A DNA stretch of 64,000 nucleotides, from NCBI GenBank assembly GCA_020137815.1, contig CM035351.1:5208001-5272000 (forward strand). The letters run 5' to 3'. Each line of letters starts with the position of its first letter. Positions within the stretch are counted from its first letter, which is position 1. The DNA is from Hormiphora californensis. Its lineage: Eukaryota > Animalia > Ctenophora. This document shows, piece after piece, positions 110 through 20,042 of this stretch. The notes under the pieces are model-generated. The model was not told where the DNA came from. It worked only from the letters and a program-made list of their open reading frames with translations, and searched no databases. Made by a program: the position numbers and the translations under genes.

Positions 110-7043
<6,934 letters not shown>

Positions 7044-7204
7044 TCATGGGTTGTGGGTTGGTATTTTTATTTAGTTTTAGCCTTTATATTTAACCTTGTT
7101 TTCACATCCCCACACAAATGAGAGAGGAGTGGGTCTTCAGTCTTGGGAGACAGAATGAATGGGAATGGGTTGAAAGAGTAATCATTTGTTAATAGGGAGA
7201 GAAT

Positions 7205-7208
<4 letters not shown>

Positions 7209-7282
<74 letters not shown>
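7209..7282. repeat. (GA)n microsatellite downstream of the EPC stop codon
   Basis: Direct reading. Confidence 0.95.
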
Positions 7283-7284
<2 letters not shown>

Positions 7285-9297
7285 ATATAATCCCCTTCTA
7301 CTAAACTTGCTGATTTGTGTTAAAGTTGCTTGAATTGTTATCTATGTTATAAGTTAAGTCGTCAAATAACTTGTAGTTTGCACAAGTATGTAGTGCAGAT
7401 TATTATCACCTCAAAAACAAACGTGTTTTGACTTTGAAACCTAACACTGGGGAAAACTAGCAAATATTTTGAGGAGTCCGATTTGGTACGCGCAAATAAA
7501 ATCCGCGCCGCGCGCAGTGTTGGAATGCGCTGCACTGCAGCGTAAAATAAATCGAACAACTCGGTGTCGGCTTGTTGTGGCCAGCGTTAAAATCGGAAAA
7601 CGTTAAAATCTGGGTGCCTTCCATTGCTAACAATTCATCGATTTTGGCGGTCGAGACGGGTTAGGGCTGTTGTTAGGGTCGGGTTAGGGCTTTGTTTGGG
7701 GTCATCGGTTAGGGCTATCGATTCTCTATCAGACACCGTTTAGTTTACTCAAATCGGCCATGTGGTTGCGTGGCTATAGCCGTTTGAAAAAAGTCGGTCT
7801 AGGAAATAAAAGTGTACTCTTTTTGGTAGCGCGCACCTGTAAACACGCTGCAAGGCACCCAGATTATAATCACGCCCGTTAAAATCTGGGTGTTTTGGGA
7901 GTGCTGACAAACGGTTTTTTAGGGTTAGGGCTAAAGTAGGGCTGGGGTTAGGCCTTGACATTCCCTACCAGATAAACGTTGAATCAGCCAAAACGGTTGA
8001 GGGGTTTGGCGGTTAGAGCCATTTTAGTGAATCAACTTTTTTGGCAGGGCGCACCTGTAAACAGGCCTGAGGCCTCCAAACACCCATATCGTAACGGCGC
8101 CCGCTTGTTGTTTCTTCAAAAAGAGAAAGGGTTTGGGTTTGAAAAACGCTGCCCTATCGGGGGCCAGCAGCGTTTGCCAAGGTTTTGGTTGGGGTTAGGC
8201 CTTGACATTCCCTACCAGATAAGCTTTGAATTAGCCAAAACGGTTGAGTGGTTTGGCGGTTAGAGCCATTTGTAAACAGGCCACGAGACACCCAGATTGT
8301 AACGGCGCCCGAAAGCACGTTGGCTGCAGTAGTCCCTAGAAGACTGAAGACGTCTGACATAGATCAGTCGTAAGCTCCTGTTCTTAATTGAATATTAGTA
8401 CTGCAAAATCGTTGTTTCTCTTTAATTGTAGTCCCTAGAAGCCGTGGGAAACGCGCACACTAGGGGTCTGCAGCACATGCCAAGAAAGCAGGTTTTTTTA
8501 CATTTCCATCGCATGACCTGAGTCCTAATTCGATCATCACAGATGATTCACAGTTTACGAGAGCGTATGGGAGCTGTTATCTGCGATGTTTGGTCTAATA
8601 TATTTGGTCTAAATAGGTCACGTGGTACTGAACTATAGCACTCTGCAGAATTTCTGTGGTTTCTCATTCTGTGACCTATGATTTTAGAAAGTGTGTGAAT
8701 GTTTAGTGTAATGTGTGCTTCAATACATATTATTACACTAAAAAGAAGTACATATGGTGGCCCGAGGAATGTGTGTATCGGCGTCCATTACATTGGTGCT
8801 CCGTCATATTGGCTGCCCAGTGCCCACTGCCCACACAGCGCCGCCCACGACGTGGTCCACGACGTCCAAGGCGAAATAGCAAACAAAATTATCGGACTGC
8901 GTCTTAGACGTCGTTGACAGCGTCATAGGCAACGCTTCATACAGGCGGCCAATATGACCGCTACTGTCTCTATCCACTCAATTTTCAAAGTCTCCAATGT
9001 ACATTGATGGTGCATTACAGTCACCTTTTAATTATACTGTTGTCATCGGCCGCTCGAGAGGGATGCAGCGACATCTAGTTCTTGCAAGGAGATATATTCA
9101 ATTTAACTGTCTAACAACCTGACGGGATATCTCGAGCTATTGCATTCTGATCTGGATTTACCACAGTCCAGGAGTGATTAATTGTGTGTGTTTTCAGCTA
9201 CCAACACGTGTACTCTTGTCGAATCACGTTACACTGGCTTTTCGCTACACTGAACTGTTGTACTTTTAACTCAATCGCTATTTTTACTAGGTTAATT

Positions 9298-12133
9298 ATG
9301 TCAACTACAACAATCAAATCGAGTTTTCTGACATCGTTACTCTCCAAAAGCCGTTACAGTTTAGGAGCCATCAACTATTTTCAAGGGTTTGCTTGGTCTG
9401 TGAATGTGATACTAAGTGAAACTGGTAAGGATATTCAAGCGTATCTTTCCTGTGCACCAATAAACTCCACCAAGGAATGGATGTGCGCAACTTCATTTTC
9501 ATTGGTCGGCAGGTGAGTAGAACTTCGCTCCTAATAAAAGGCTGCAATAAAAGGCTGCAGAAAAAGGCTGCAATAAAAGGCTGCAGAAAAAGGCTGCAGA
9601 AAAAGGCTGCAGAAAAAGGCTGCAATAAAAGGCTGCAATAAAAGGCTGCAATGGATCACATATCCAACTGGACTAAAGCACTAAAGCAGGAGATAGACCG
9701 AATCGTCCTCCCCTAATAGTGTTTTGTTTCACGTATCGGTTTCTACCATAAGCGGTAGAGAGACCGAATCACCCGCCCCTAATTATAGTGATTCGTGCCT
9801 GGTATCCAACTAAACCATAGGCGGTAGATAGACGGAGATAGAGAGTTAGAGAGGTGAGAGTGAGAGATCCGAATCATGGACGACTAATCAAGTATTGTAT
9901 CACGTTTCATGATATCCTCTAATTAATTAAATGAAAGGCGGTTACCTATAATTTGACCTAATCGGTGCCAATACGTGATTACTGATTTTCTACCGTTATT
10001 CGCCAATAGTCTTTATGTACACAATTCAGTAGAGCGGAATCACACATAATACTATGATAGGTGAACCAAGTGGTTGGGTGGTTCACCTGTGATTGTGCTA
10101 CACGCTCAATCAATAGATCTACCCTACCTCATTAGACCAACACTCTCAGTAGTTACTGACTACCTCTACTGAATCGTGGATCGATACGGAAAGACTAATG
10201 GAGAATACATAGCGGTAGAGAATCACGTATCGGGACCGATGAGGTCTCATTGTCAATTGGTAACCGCTTTTCATTAGAGGATACCATGGTACGTGATACC
10301 ATACCGCGATTCTTATTTTTCACACTCTCAGTTCTCACTCGTACTCGCTCTCTATCTCGGTCTCTCTCTATTGCCTATGGTCTAGTTGGATACGTGACAC
10401 GAATCACTATAATTAGGGGAGGGTTATTCGGTCTCACTACAGCCGATACGTGATACGAAACACTATTAGGGGAGGACGATTCGGTCTATCCCCCGCTTTA
10501 GTCTGGTTGGATACGTGATCCCTTGCAGCCTTTTATTGCAGCCTTTTATTGCAGCCTTTTATTGCAGCCTTTTTCTGCAGCCTTTTATTGCAGCCTTTTA
10601 TTGCAGCCTTTTTCTGCAGCCTTTTATTGCAGCCTTTTATTGCAGCCTTTTATTAGGAGCGAAGTTCTACTCACCTGCCCATTGGTCAACCCTAGAACAG
10701 GAGTCAACGTTAATTCTACAAAAAAATATTCTAATGTTAAATATCTCTCATGTAGTGCTGGAAAATTGGACACATTTGAAAGCGTAAGAAAAGTTGACTG
10801 GTTTACGATTGAGGCTAATATTACAATCAATGACTGTTATATTGGACCGCCTACTGTCATTGAAGCGAGGCCGAACTTGGTGATTTTTCATCGATTGGCA
10901 AAGACCTTTGTGTCGGTGATAAAGCAAACTAGCTGTTATGAAGCCAATGGGGCTACTTGGATTGCGGAAGGTCACAAATCTGAAAATGGGCTAAAGTTCA
11001 TGGTTAAAAAGTACACACCAAATGGCTTAGTTTCTTGGAAAGACCTCACGGTAACTATTCGGAGCCCAAACTCTGTAGAAACTGTTTCTAATTCAAGAGA
11101 GCTCTTGTTCCTAAAAAAGATTGAAGAACAGTCAATTGTAACTTTTTTCATCCACGATCAACCATTTACGTGTGAGACTGAGATTTCAAAGGGGTTTGAT
11201 TTTGGGAGAGAGAAACTGTCCTGCCATATCCATGGGAATGTAAACTTTAGTCTTCAAGATGGAAGCACAATTCCTCTGAACTCCTACATTCTGGCTCACA
11301 ACTCTCCTGTCTTGACAGAGCTTGTGGAGGAGGTTGGAGAGATTGATCATGATGTTACTGACTTTCATCCTGAGGCTGTCAGAATCTTCGTTGATGCGTG
11401 TTACACTGGGAGTGTTGAAATGCTAAATAATGACACTAAGTTTAGCGTCTTCAGCGACTTTGTAAAAATGGTTTCTGTCTTCAAAGTTGATTGGGCAAAA
11501 GAACAATGTCTTGGATTCTATAAGAGGCTGCTACCCGCACCCTCTGACGATTTTGATAGTTACTGGAGCTTCGCCTTGCTAGCACTTGACTCAGCAGTGA
11601 AGTATGGAGACACACACTTCCTAGAATACCTTCTATCAAACACCCCAAAGAACACTGGTGAATTTCAATTCTGCTTTTCTGAGCTGCTTGCAAAGACTTC
11701 AAAGCGGTCCCATCTCGATTTGATTATGGTTATGATAGTTGAGTTTGATCTTGTGGATGAGTTTTTGAAACAAATTCTTACTTTACTGGCCGTAAGGTTT
11801 CAGATTCCTCTGCTTGATTACTGGCTGGCAAACTTTAACTTTACCCTCTGTGACAAGGACATACTCCTGCTTCTCACTAAGGCCATAGAGCAGAACTCCA
11901 ATGCGGAAGTTCTATGCAAGTTTAAAATGTCGCTAAACAACGATGACGCGAAAAACCTGGAGATTGAAAATGAGGTATCTGGAGATGGTACACTGGCGAC
12001 TCTGGCAAGGAACCACTGGAACAAGATTGTGAACTCAGCATGGCCCTGTTCCAAGAAGCGGCCATTTTGTCTCATCAAGAGAGAACTATGTGAGGATGAG
12101 GATAAAGGAAGGAAGGCACAAGACGGGGCTTAG
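9298..12133 (+). CDS. MATH-like + BTB/POZ domain protein. Predicted exons 9298-9512 and 10696-12133 (550 aa); the single intron is a transposon
   Basis: Exon 1 FQGFAWSVNV..IQAYLSC..WMCATSFSLV continues after the insertion as NPRTG..FTIEANITI (MATH-like pattern). NVNFSLQDGSTIPLNSYILAHNSPVL..DFHPEAVRIFVDACYTG is BTB-like. The joined CDS is 1653 nt and in frame. Confidence 0.75.
9508..10679. mobile_element. Non-autonomous TIR element, 8-bp TSD, GG...CC termini (Merlin-like), with 13-bp subterminal tandem repeats
   Basis: CATTGGTC|GGCAGGTGAGTAGAACTTCGCTCCTAATAAAAGG...CCTTTTATTAGGAGCGAAGTTCTACTCACCTGCC|CATTGGTC. (AATAAAAGGCTGC)n-type arrays at about 9533-9651 and inverted at about 10525-10654. 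Superfamily assignment is an inference. Confidence 0.92.
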
Positions 12134-17764: not shown

Positions 17765-20042
17765 CTACAACAATGCAGCTCTACTCTCAAGTCCCTCGAT
17801 CTGCCTCGCCACCTTGTGTGCCTCTATCTCCTCTTGTGTAAAGGCCCACTCTGCTATCCTGAACCCATCCTCCTTCTCTCCATTCCCGCTCTTCAGCGAC
17901 ACTCGGGGCATCATCGCTTCTATCTCCGTTACAAAGATCAACGTGTTGAAGTCGGTTATTGTCACAGCCTTTGCCTTCGCTTCATTCGTTTTCTCCCCCA
18001 TCATGGAAATGAACATGTTCACGATGATAATGCTACCTGTAACGGACCAGTAACAATGCAGGATATACCACCAAAATGTCAGAGGAACATCGTACGTGGC
18101 ACTCTTGTCCTCCAGAATCGAAAGACCCAGATCGTAGTCGTAGACAAAGTGGGTCTTCCTGAATGTTTCGAAGAAGACAAACTCTATCCTCGAGTAGGTA
18201 GTATTCGCATCTTGGTGATGCCATCTTGCCATCTTGCCATCTTGGTGATGCCATCTTGCCATCTTGCCATCTTGGTGATGCCATCACAACTCAGCCCGCT
18301 TCGCGGGCTTCGTTTTCGCACGCTACGCGCACGAGTTGTAAGGGTGACTGCGTCACCAAATTCGCATCCAGAGTCGCATCTCCCAGATTCCAACTGTAAA
18401 CTGTGTCCCAGAATATTGCGAATATGGGAATGTAAATGACCAGCCAGAGGACCCCCATTTTGAGAAGTAACCGGGAGATGGTGTGGAGAACCTCGGCAAT
18501 GTAGCCCATCCTAGTAAAGACTCGGAGGGTGGTAAGACCCACGATGTACTGAAGGAGCAGGATGGCAGAGCTAAGGTAATCTCTATACTGATTAGCAATC
18601 AGAATGTTATCCTTGTCATTGTAACCAGAGGAACTCATTGTGGTGGAGTTGCTCCGAAGTTCTTTGTCAGCGCCCTCCTTAAGTCTGCTTGTTCCGGAAA
18701 ATGTCTCCACAAAAACGTAAATAAGGAATATCAGGGTTAAGATGTCCACAAAATATTCATACAGGGACTCTCCCACTATCTCCTTCGACTTGAACTTCAG
18801 TACATCTTTGATACCTTGAGAGGCTTTTCGAAGACGTCTTGCACAGTTCTGCATTTTCGGGTGAGAGGCGAGCTCCTCCTTATGTGTTAGATCTTCTTCG
18901 TACTTCTGAAACTTTTCCACAGCTCTCCATCGACATATCAGCCTACAGAAATCATACCCCATAATGAAAATGATAACTCCTAAATTTAGAATCAGGGCTG
19001 CTTCAAGTTCTGAACTTGCATCTTTCGACAGATATAACGAACTGTCTAGCAAGTAGATGACAGTCCAAATTAGAATGTAGACCCACTTCATAACTCCGTA
19101 GACCGTGAAAAATTTCCACCCAAAGCGGTTCCATTTTTCTGTCAGTGTCCCTTGGAACACTTTATGCCTGAGTAGTGTTGCAATTCCAGAGTGAGTGTCA
19201 TTCTGGCCTGGGTTCAGGATCATACCCGCGTCAAGGGAGTTCCCACAACTAACATCCTCACCATCCATCCAGAAATAATTCACATTCCTCTGAGGACACT
19301 TCACCACCTTGCGATCCATCAGCTCCGTCGCCACAGGGGGCAGCTTTTGGGCAACTCTGAGCAGAAACGACAGCTCAGCCTCGCTCTGGTCGTTGTAGGT
19401 GTAGTCATGGTTTTTGAGGAGATAGGATGCCAGATCTTGTCGTTTGTAGAAAGTCGCCAGCCAGAGCGGTGTCCTTCCATGGCCGTCTACTGTGGACAAC
19501 ATTTCAGATTCCACTGAGTGAAAGAGCTTCATTACCTCCAAGCTGCCGCAGATGGCTGCAATGTGAATGGGAGTCCGTGAGCCCACCCTACATTTCATGA
19601 ACATCAGAGGCCTGTGATGAAGAATGAGCTGTTTGGCAATGTCCGCTCGACCGGAAATTGCACAGTAGTGGACAGCGTTAAAACCAAACTCATCAAATCT
19701 CGTCACATCCCCTCCTGCTTTCACAAAATCGTCCAATCTCTCCAATGAGCCTACTAAACTCAGTGCATGTAGGACATTCATTCCACTACTGTCCCCCGTG
19801 TCCACACTTGGCATGTCAGATAGGCACTCTCTAAACTTCCTTCCATCGATATCAAGAACTGGGAAATCTTCGCCTGAAACGTCCTGTTCCATCAAGTTTT
19901 CCAGATATCTGTGGGCTGAATAAGTGTGAGCAAAGGAGGGGTCTGCTCGGTGAAGGGGAAGATCAAACAGGGTCTCTCGGACTTTGTCAAGATCAGATTT
20001 TCCAAACTTCCGCAACCTATCCAGAAGGTTCTTGCGCCCCAT
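17765..20042 (-). CDS. Ankyrin-repeat TRP cation channel (TRPV/TRPA-like), otherwise intronless, interrupted by a 148-bp insertion; possibly a disrupted allele
   Basis: Ankyrin repeats (GMNVLH, GFNAVH, SRTPIH, GRTPLW), six hydrophobic segments, and S6 IIIVNMFISMMGEKT. Removing the insertion plus one TSD gives a continuous 2121-nt ORF (706 aa). Confidence 0.85.
18212..18359. mobile_element. 148-bp mini-element with 9-bp TSD and 7-bp TIR
   Basis: ATTCGCATC|TTGGTGA...TCACCAA|ATTCGCATC (TSDs 18203-18211 and 18360-18368). Internal 30-bp tandem repeats and hairpins. Confidence 0.85.

What the first reader, a model, noticed from the sequence alone, without database searches (positions are those of the whole stretch)
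9500..10695. Candidate introner: a DNA transposon inserted in an exon that can be spliced out in frame
Seen: a 1,172-bp TIR element with TSD CATTGGTC splits the MATH-like domain (pre-insertion ...SLV|NPRTG). Five nt inside the element is a consensus donor, GGCAG|GTGAGT (intron start 9513). The first AG after the right TIR is host CCTAG (10694-10695), preceded by 29 AG-free nt. Joining gives GTC GGC AG/A ACA GGA, which is in frame and changes NP to G (net -1 aa, 550-aa protein). The downstream exon has no stop before 12131. Established: introner DNA transposons create introns by carrying one splice site and co-opting the other from host sequence. Inference: this is a young, large, Merlin-like intron generator in an animal.
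Basis: partly seen in the sequence, partly recalled or inferred. Interest (0 to 1): 0.9.

Follow-up and report, generated by a model that had tools for sequence, protein, structure and literature searches.

The report
Young Merlin transposon splitting an exon
A recently inserted 1.2-kb Merlin-type DNA transposon interrupts the single coding exon of a comb-jelly MATH-BTB gene; its ends look like splice signals, so it could be spliced out in frame, but no RNA data cover the gene and the family does not behave like a dedicated intron generator.

Summary
A 1,172-bp element (9508-10679) has perfect 24-nt TIR cores and a perfect 8-bp TSD (CATTGGTC). It splits an otherwise intact intronless MATH-BTB ORF. 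A 9/9 consensus donor lies 5 nt inside the left end. The first host AG (10694-10695) gives an in-frame join (NP to G, 550 aa).

The Merlin call holds: terminal GG, 8-bp TSDs in 33 of 39 copies, and a copy with the same ends that encodes an IS1595-type DDE transposase. The element is young, 98.6% identical to its nearest examined sister copy.

The introner reading is untested and gets little support at family level.
- No RNA covers the gene. The only match is a 203-nt contig inside the element.
- Only 2 of 39 copies lie in host coding exons, which is no enrichment.
- A different autonomous Merlin family shares the terminal GGCAGGTGAG, so the donor is probably a transposase-recognition end.
- The right arm offers about 14 competing AGs, most out of frame. 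One, TAG|G at 10656, would always add exactly 36 nt.
- The left arm carries five AATAAA signals.

The most likely reading is a recent, possibly polymorphic, gene-breaking insertion with at best leaky splicing. Other first-stage notes on this genome flag similar exonic transposons.

The parts
9298..9507 (+). 5' part of the MATH-BTB coding exon (70 codons from the ATG; MSTTTIK...FSLV)
   Evidence: Open frame. The N-terminus aligns with the start of homologues. Paralogues carry this part fused to the rest in one ORF.
9500..9507 (.). Left copy of the 8-bp target-site duplication CATTGGTC
9508..10679 (.). Non-autonomous, nearly palindromic Merlin-superfamily element (1,172 bp; no transposase ORF)
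   Evidence: Self reverse-complement identity is 74%. It folds as a hairpin about 570 bp long, -742 kcal/mol. Only short low-complexity ORFs lie inside it.
9508..9531 (.). Left TIR core GGCAGGTGAGTAGAACTTCGCTCC (inverted-repeat arms extend to about 9679 / 10495)
   Evidence: (I1, I2)
9510..9518 (+). Consensus 5' splice-site motif CAG|GTGAGT (cut after 9512). In the exon frame it reads GGC AGG TGA, so read-through stops here.
   Evidence: It is the only MAG|GTRAGT match in 9298-12133, and the read-through product is 72 aa.
9533..9652 (+). Left subterminal array of 13-bp repeats (AAAAGGCTGCAAT/GA) with five AATAAA hexamers at 9533, 9546, 9572, 9624 and 9637
   Evidence: (D2)
10523..10654 (+). 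Right subterminal 13-bp repeat array (TTGCAGCCTTTTA), offering 11 pyrimidine-rich CAG acceptor-like sites. Every third one is in frame and stop-free.
   Evidence: (D1)
10655..10656 (+). Element-borne acceptor candidate TTTTATTAG|G. With the TIR donor it leaves 5 + 23 nt of the element plus the 8-nt TSD, 36 nt in all, which is in frame (+12 aa here).
   Evidence: By inspection, the 28 retained element letters have no stop in any of the three frames.
10667..10674 (+). Branch-point-like CTACTCAC (A at 10673) inside the pyrimidine-rich, AG-free right TIR. It is the reverse complement of the donor motif.
   Evidence: The distance from 10673 to the host AG at 10695 is 22 nt.
10656..10679 (.). Right TIR core GGAGCGAAGTTCTACTCACCTGCC
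10680..10687 (.). Right copy of the TSD CATTGGTC
10694..10695 (+). First host AG after the element (CCCTAG|A).
10688..12133 (+). 3' part of the MATH-BTB coding exon (481 codons plus stop), containing the BTB domain
   Evidence: PF00651, E = 3.5e-5. It aligns end to end with homologues.

Best explanation
A young, non-autonomous, almost perfectly palindromic Merlin-superfamily transposon has cut-and-pasted into the single coding exon of one member of a large, fast-turning-over MATH-BTB gene family. The host is a comb jelly, most likely Hormiphora californensis. In the DNA the insertion breaks the gene: read-through translation stops two codons into the element, at the TGA inside the donor motif.

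The terminal motif GGCAGGTGAG is probably kept for the transposase. It happens to be a perfect 5' splice site, and its reverse complement at the other end is a branch-point-like, pyrimidine-rich, AG-free stretch. If the gene is transcribed, the spliceosome may therefore remove all or most of the element. That splicing would most likely be heterogeneous, using the host AG or one of about 14 element AGs, and would compete with five AATAAA signals. This is how Ds, dSpm or Tc1 insertions in exons behave (my own knowledge, not checked here).

Shown here: the element, its family, its superfamily, its youth, its exonic position and the frame arithmetic. Inferred: everything about RNA. The most likely status is a recent, possibly polymorphic, loss-of-function or leaky allele. 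It is not an established intron, and the family is not a dedicated introner.
For: Structure and family. Merlin membership: with the defining features taken from PMC8101967. Youth. Ancestral state uninterrupted: paralogues with both halves in one 570-600-aa ORF and homologues contiguous across the site. Dispensability is plausible: at least 90 paralogous loci, many with internal stops, and the nearest paralogue is only 61% identical. No exon preference: 3 of 39 copies have an open frame of 150 aa or more spanning the empty site, against 11% of 116 control sites, and one of the three lies in a retroelement RT ORF. A distinct autonomous Merlin shares the terminal motif: GGCAGGTGAGAAGAAG, 14 of 16 letters identical, with different subterminal repeats. 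Competing signals. The likely source species has 3.2% heterozygosity, so a single-haplotype insertion is plausible (PMC8527503).
Against: The donor is a full 9/9 consensus match. The right end supplies a branch-point-like motif 22 nt before the first host AG. At least three joins are in frame. A second same-TIR element sits in an intact, single-copy L-xylulose reductase ORF; the first host AG and a CAG|G further on are both in frame there. Another first-stage note reports a further exonic palindromic transposon of 1,323 letters, a length that matches a same-TIR copy in the list; I did not read it. Intact ORF halves around the insertions are what a functional new intron would leave, although for young insertions they are also expected by default. 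The absence of RNA evidence cuts both ways.
Confidence: 0.6

Rival explanations
1. Nascent functional intron. The pre-mRNA is spliced mainly from the TIR donor (after 9512) to the first host AG (10695), using the branch-point-like CTACTCAC in the right TIR. This yields a 550-aa protein with NP replaced by G in a variable MATH loop, so the gene stays functional.
For: The donor is 9/9 consensus and is the only such site in the gene. The branch-point-like A at 10673 lies 22 nt before the AG, with 29 AG-free nt between. The join is in frame and stop-free. The insertion site falls in a stretch of variable length and sequence among homologues. The hairpin would bring the two ends together. The second exonic copy, in the L-xylulose reductase gene, also has in-frame solutions.
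Against: No RNA evidence exists. An in-frame outcome has a 1 in 3 chance per site, and the element's design does not guarantee it. Eleven pyrimidine-rich CAG acceptors and a TAG|G lie upstream of the host AG, and most are out of frame. Five AATAAA hexamers lie 20-130 nt after the donor. The donor pairs with the right TIR in a -742 kcal/mol hairpin. Intact ORFs are expected anyway for an insertion this young.
Confidence: 0.2
2. The family as a whole is a Merlin-derived introner: an element selected to be spliced, spreading introns through genes. The element-borne pair, the donor at +5 and the TAG|G 23 nt from the right end, would leave exactly 36 nt (5 + 23 + 8 of TSD) in any phase and orientation. 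That would resemble the Aureococcus introners, which add 12 nt.
For: 5 + 23 + 8 = 36, and the 28 retained element letters are stop-free in all three frames (plus inspection). The signals are the same in both orientations because the element is palindromic. Introners that add codons are on record (PMC9860276). Two copies, possibly three, lie in exons with intact flanking ORFs.
Against: Only 2 of 39 copies lie in host coding exons, with no enrichment over controls. The TAG|G is specific to one subfamily and is absent from the L032 and L045 type. A different Merlin family shares the terminal motif, which fits a role for the transposase. The chance that the sum is a multiple of 3 and that all frames are open is roughly 0.1, which is not compelling. 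At 1,172 nt the element exceeds the reported range of family median lengths, 30-654 nt.
Confidence: 0.08
3. The element rewires the transcript rather than being removed. Either the left-arm AATAAA signals cause premature polyadenylation, or one of the strong right-arm acceptors takes the spliced leader by trans-splicing. The second route would give an N-terminally truncated protein with little of the MATH domain.
For: There are five AATAAA hexamers. Eleven CCTTTTATTGCAG-type acceptors lie in the right arm. Spliced-leader trans-splicing is reported as common in the probable source species (PMC8527503).
Against: No RNA evidence exists. Binding of U1 at the adjacent strong donor might suppress nearby poly(A) sites; this is an inference from general knowledge and was not tested here.
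Confidence: 0.08
4. Assembly artefact: the element was placed in the exon by misassembly.
For: The family is repetitive and the likely source genome is highly heterozygous.
Against: The 8-bp TSD is perfect and the restored empty-site frame is exact. This is the same signature as 33 of 39 other copies.
Confidence: 0.02

Closest known systems
Merlin superfamily DNA transposons and their non-autonomous derivatives (Feschotte 2004, as summarised in PMC8101967)
   Same: TIRs begin with GG. TSDs are 8 bp. A same-TIR copy (L045) encodes a DDE_Tnp_IS1595 transposase. A sister family (L048) has an intact 312-aa transposase. Subterminal short tandem repeats are present.
   Different: The element is 1.17 kb, almost entirely palindromic and without an ORF, so it is foldback-like. 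Its terminal motif doubles as a consensus 5' splice site.
Introners: intron-generating DNA transposons of Micromonas, Aureococcus, Symbiodinium, Chrysochromulina and others (PMC9860276, PMC12130899, PMC11282704)
   Same: It is a non-autonomous TIR/TSD element that carries one splice site and would need to take the other from host sequence, like the Chrysochromulina type that carries the 5' site and co-opts the 3' site. An alternative element-borne pair would add a fixed number of codons, like the Aureococcus 12-nt type. The host is aquatic.
   Different: Splicing is not shown. Copies are not concentrated in genes (2 of 39 in host coding exons). The element is larger than the reported family medians (30-654 nt). 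Frame preservation is not built in under the host-AG model. A Merlin-derived introner was not mentioned in the two introner surveys and one review I word-searched.
Splicing of ordinary transposons out of exons: maize Ds/dSpm and C. elegans Tc1 (from my own knowledge, not checked here)
   Same: A transposon in a coding exon has donor-like sequence in its terminus. Removal is expected to be heterogeneous and partly in frame, giving leaky alleles.
   Different: Those cases rest on cDNA evidence, and here there is none. The donor here is a full consensus match rather than a cryptic site.
MITE-derived introns of the tunicate Fritillaria borealis (Henriet et al. 2019, as cited in PMC11282704)
   Same: An animal in which inverted-repeat transposon insertions in genes are removed as introns.
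   Different: The Fritillaria introns are mostly non-canonical (AG-AC, AG-AT) and number in the thousands. Here the signals are canonical GT...AG and only two or three exonic copies are known.

Membership tests
Merlin superfamily (class II, TIR) | TIRs with a conserved terminal 5'-GG | tested here: met
   GGCAGGTGAG... at both ends. The feature is taken from PMC8101967.
Merlin superfamily (class II, TIR) | 8- or 9-bp target-site duplication | tested here: met
   33 of 39 copies have a perfect 8-bp TSD. One more (L019) fits a 9-bp TSD.
Merlin superfamily (class II, TIR) | Autonomous relatives encode a DDE_Tnp_IS1595-type transposase between the same TIRs | tested here: met
   L045 4151-7993 has the same right TIR and the same 13-mer repeats. 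Its ORF hits PF12762 at E = 7.7e-12. That ORF is 61% identical to the intact 312-aa transposase of L048. The left TIR of L045 is degraded and its transposase frame is split, so its activity is unknown.
Introner (intron-generating transposon) | A family of near-identical copies with transposon hallmarks | tested here: met
   About 95 copies at 90-99.8% identity, with TIRs and TSDs.
Introner (intron-generating transposon) | Copies coincide end to end with spliceosomal introns of many unrelated genes | tested here: not met
   Among 39 copies with flanks, only 2 lie in host coding exons (MATH-BTB, L-xylulose reductase) and 1 in a retroelement ORF. This is not above control sites. About 55 copies could not be fetched and no annotation was available, so the count is a lower bound.
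Introner (intron-generating transposon) | RNA evidence that the copies are spliced out | not testable with these tools
   Only one 203-nt contig, inside the element, was found. No exon was covered and no joints were seen. No near-identical protein or contig was found elsewhere.
Introner (intron-generating transposon) | The element carries at least one splice site and obtains the other from the TSD or host | tested here: inconclusive
   At the sequence level this holds: a consensus donor, a branch-point-like motif, and a host AG 16 nt after the end. The TSDs show no conserved AG, and a second Merlin family shares the donor motif.
MITE / foldback-type non-autonomous element | No transposase ORF; long inverted arms; high copy number | tested here: met
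   No ORF longer than 90 aa lies wholly or partly in the element, and those present are low-complexity or repeat-derived. The arms pair along nearly the whole length. The element is longer than a typical MITE.

The most novel reading that the evidence does not exclude
A Merlin-derived, 1.2-kb palindromic element family in a ctenophore works as an introner. Its TIR encodes a consensus 5' splice site at one end and a branch point plus pyrimidine tract at the other, in either orientation. Exonic insertions, in the MATH-BTB gene here and in the single-copy L-xylulose reductase, would then be removed in frame and survive as brand-new introns. This would add an early-branching animal lineage, a new transposon superfamily and a new size class to the known introners.
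Probability: 0.15. Interest if true: 0.8.

Novelty: new member of a known kind. Interest (0 to 1): 0.42.

Why it matters
If splicing were shown, this would be an intron caught at birth in an animal. It would come from a superfamily (Merlin) that the introner surveys I word-searched do not mention, and its cognate transposase is still identifiable. That would make the mechanism of intron gain directly testable. As the evidence stands, it is a well-documented example of a recent exonic transposon insertion with good-looking splice signals. It is useful as a target for the existing RNA and long-read data of the source individual, but it is not evidence of intron creation. The conserved terminal motif shared by two Merlin families shows how a transposase-recognition end can mimic a splice donor by accident.

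Tried and rejected
1. RNA evidence. The look-up of sequencing runs listed only a seawater metatranscriptome (6% of words) and one run with the same species label and next to no words. Read laying placed a single 203-nt contig inside the element (9827-10023), with no exon coverage and no joints.

2. Gene models or transcripts in the protein collection. Exon 2 found nothing above 81% identity. The 70-aa N-terminal piece found nothing at all.

3. Empty-site or spliced contigs in metagenomes. Both scans were blank.

4. The L-xylulose reductase locus as a proxy. The closest protein (P0028, 96% identical) starts at an internal Met downstream of the site, so it says nothing about the junction.

5. 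More copies. About 55 of the roughly 95 copies, including the reported exonic copy of 1,323 letters, could not be read.

6. The longer same-TIR copies as autonomous elements. L031 and L033 carry nested retrotransposons. L034 carries a captured KH-domain ORF. L032 carries another nested repeat. Only L045 carries a Merlin transposase.

7. Rejected reading: treating the branch-point-like motif as independent support. It is the reverse complement of the donor.

Joins were made only inside scripts, to count frames and stops.
Full report
OBSERVATION

The sequence reads ...ttcattggtc|GGCAGGTGAGTAGAACTTCGCTCC... on the left and ...GGAGCGAAGTTCTACTCACCTGCC|cattggtcaaccctagaacagg on the right. The element is therefore 9508-10679 (1,172 bp). 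It has perfect 24-nt TIR cores and a perfect 8-bp TSD, CATTGGTC, at 9500-9507 and 10680-10687.
- The inverted arms extend about 145-170 nt and contain 13-bp tandem repeats.
- The whole element is 74% identical to its own reverse complement.
- As RNA it folds into a hairpin about 570 bp long, at -742 kcal/mol.
The donor cut is after 9512, and the first AG after the element is at 10694-10695, after 29 AG-free nt. The join is stop-free to the stop codon at 12131-12133 and gives 550 aa, with NP replaced by G. The next AG (10700) is out of frame.
- Without splicing, translation stops at the TGA inside the donor motif, giving a 72-aa product.

THE ELEMENT FAMILY

The 24-nt TIR occurs 98 times forward and 97 times reverse in the 110.7-Mb genome. 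The reversed control pattern occurs 0 times. That is about 95 elements.
- Of 39 copies for which I held flanks, 33 have a perfect 8-bp TSD. The TSDs show no target consensus.
- The focal copy is 98.6% identical to its nearest examined sister copy. Other pairs reach 99.8%, so transposition is recent.
- Longer same-TIR copies mostly carry secondary cargo: non-LTR retrotransposons in L031 and L033, a KH-domain ORF in L034, and another repeat in L032.

SUPERFAMILY

A search of the genome with PF12762 (DDE_Tnp_IS1595) gave nine hits. One lies 2.3 kb from a lone right TIR.
- That locus, L045 4151-7993, has the family's right TIR, a degraded left TIR and the same 13-mers. One of its ORFs matches PF12762 at E = 7.7e-12.
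- A second Merlin, L048 4331-7844, has an 8-bp TSD (AGAGAAAG), an intact 312-aa transposase ORF and different subterminal repeats. Its TIR starts GGCAGGTGAGAAGAAG, which matches the focal TIR at 14 of 16 letters.
- The two transposases are 61% identical over the DDE half. The L048 type has one intact copy and one truncated copy.
- Terminal GG, an 8-9-bp TSD and an IS1595-type transposase are the published Merlin hallmarks (PMC8101967). The Merlin-like call is therefore supported.
- Two families share the first ten letters but differ in their internal repeats. The donor-like end is therefore most simply a transposase-recognition motif.

THE HOST GENE

Removing the element and one TSD restores a single ORF with its ATG at 9298.
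- The 3' part has a BTB domain.
- At least 90 paralogous loci exist in the genome. Many are intronless ORFs of 570-600 aa that hold both halves without a break, for example G000:C9:5108591-5110234. Many others carry stops. The nearest paralogue is 61% identical.
- Homologues from a related species carry Pfam MATH (about residues 18-110) plus BTB, and align straight across the insertion site. The site falls in a stretch of variable length.
- The insertion therefore splits the MATH domain of a previously intact member of a birth-and-death gene family.

IS IT SPLICED?

This could not be tested.
Laying them gave a single 203-nt contig inside the element and nothing on the exons.
- No near-identical protein exists in the 5.8-billion-protein collection for either exon piece.
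- Two metagenome scans were blank.
- The joined-junction search is therefore left out.

INDIRECT EVIDENCE

In favour of splicing:
- The donor is a 9/9 match to MAG|GTRAGT and is the only such site in the gene.
- The right TIR is pyrimidine-rich and AG-free over its last 15 nt. It contains CTACTCAC, with its A 22 nt before the host AG.
- A second same-TIR element (L032, 3,492 bp, TSD GATGTAAC) interrupts an intact, single-copy L-xylulose reductase ORF of 60 + 182 aa. The first host AG (a GAG) and a later CAG|G are both in frame there.
- Another first-stage note reports a 1,323-letter palindromic transposon in a coding exon. Its length matches a same-TIR copy in the list, but I could not read it.

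Against splicing, or neutral:
- The branch-point-like motif is just the reverse complement of the donor.
- An in-frame result has a prior of 1 in 3 per AG.
- The right arm offers 11 CCTTTTATTGCAG-type acceptors plus TAG|G (10656), GAG|C (10659) and AAG|T (10664) before the host AG. Most of these are out of frame.
- The left arm has five AATAAA hexamers within 130 nt of the donor.
- The donor is paired with the right TIR in the predicted hairpin.
- Only 3 of 39 copies have an open frame of 150 aa or more spanning the empty site, against 11% of 116 control sites. One of the three lies in a retroelement RT ORF. Pfam found nothing convincing in the next-best flanking ORFs.
- For insertions this young, intact flanking ORFs are expected whether or not the element is spliced.

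The 28 element letters are stop-free in all three frames. In this subfamily such a splice would add exactly 12 codons at any site, in any phase and in either orientation. This recalls the Aureococcus introners, which add 12 nt (PMC9860276). The TAG|G is absent from the L032 and L045 subfamily, and the coincidence has a chance of roughly 0.1.

ORGANISM

The genome has 110,691,255 bases in 45 contigs, 13 of them large. The published Hormiphora californensis assembly has 110 Mb, 44 scaffolds and 13 chromosomes (PMC8527503). The best named homologue of the reductase is from the ctenophore Bolinopsis. That paper reports 3.2% heterozygosity and common spliced-leader trans-splicing. A single-haplotype insertion and trans-splicing onto the element's acceptors are therefore both plausible.

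COMPARISON WITH KNOWN SYSTEMS

The element is a member of the Merlin superfamily; all three defining features were tested and met. It resembles introners in anatomy only. The defining features, copies that coincide with spliced introns in many genes and RNA proof, are either not met in my sample or not testable. Introners are reported in only two animal groups, and family median lengths range from 30 to 654 nt. The nearest functional analogy is the leaky splicing of Ds, dSpm or Tc1 insertions out of exons (my own knowledge).

VERDICT

The most likely reading (0.6) is a recent, possibly polymorphic, gene-disrupting Merlin insertion whose transposase-recognition end mimics a splice donor, with at best heterogeneous splicing. 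The nascent-intron reading keeps about 0.2, and a true Merlin introner family about 0.1. Existing RNA and long-read DNA data from the sequenced individual would settle the question in one mapping run.

Noticed in passing
L032 (G000:C2:780734-785225), element 501-3992; downstream ORF L063:1501-2046: A 3,492-bp same-TIR Merlin derivative (TSD GATGTAAC, with another repeat nested at about 464-1658) interrupts an otherwise intact, single-copy L-xylulose reductase (DCXR-like) ORF of 60 + 182 aa. The first host AG (-9 nt) and a CAG|G (-27 nt) are both in frame.
   Followed up: partly
L048 (G000:C11:4372000-4381999) 4331-7844: An apparently intact autonomous Merlin. TIR GGCAGGTGAGAAGAAGCCCGACCGG, 8-bp TSD AGAGAAAG, a 312-aa IS1595-type transposase ORF (4763-5701) and a second 233-aa ORF (6670-7371). 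A 99%-identical truncated copy lies at G000:C9:6958175-6958891.
   Followed up: partly
L045 (G000:C1:572000-581500) 4151-7993: The only copy carrying the focal family's cognate transposase. The left TIR is degraded, no TSD is recognisable, and the transposase frame is split, possibly by an intron. It shares a second-ORF region with L032.
   Followed up: partly
L034 (G000:C2:6572438-6577056) 501-4119: A same-TIR element carrying a 438-aa KH-domain / RGG-rich ORF (PF00013, E = 1.4e-11). This looks like Pack-type gene capture.
   Followed up: no
L031 501-4525; L033 501-5588; L060 1501-2793: Nesting in both directions. Two family copies contain non-LTR retrotransposon ORFs (897 aa and 793 aa). One family copy is itself inserted in a reverse-transcriptase ORF (PF00078, E = 1.2e-22).
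   Followed up: partly
window 18203-18368: A different 148-bp TIR element (18212-18359, ends TTGGTGATGC / GCGTCACCAA) flanked by a perfect 9-bp TSD, ATTCGCATC. Another first-stage note says it lies in a TRP-channel exon. I confirmed only the TIR and TSD.
   Followed up: partly
G000:C11:2884697-2904531; C5:6302529-6313900; C7:5932605-5948614; C7:7988070-7994010: The MATH-BTB family (at least 90 loci) forms several tandem clusters of intronless genes, a good share of them with internal stops. This fits birth-and-death evolution.
   Followed up: no
window 9827-10023: A 203-nt contig from a seawater metatranscriptome matches the element's interior without a mismatch. Element-derived RNA, or contaminating DNA, of this species or a near relative is present in an environmental sample.
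   Followed up: no
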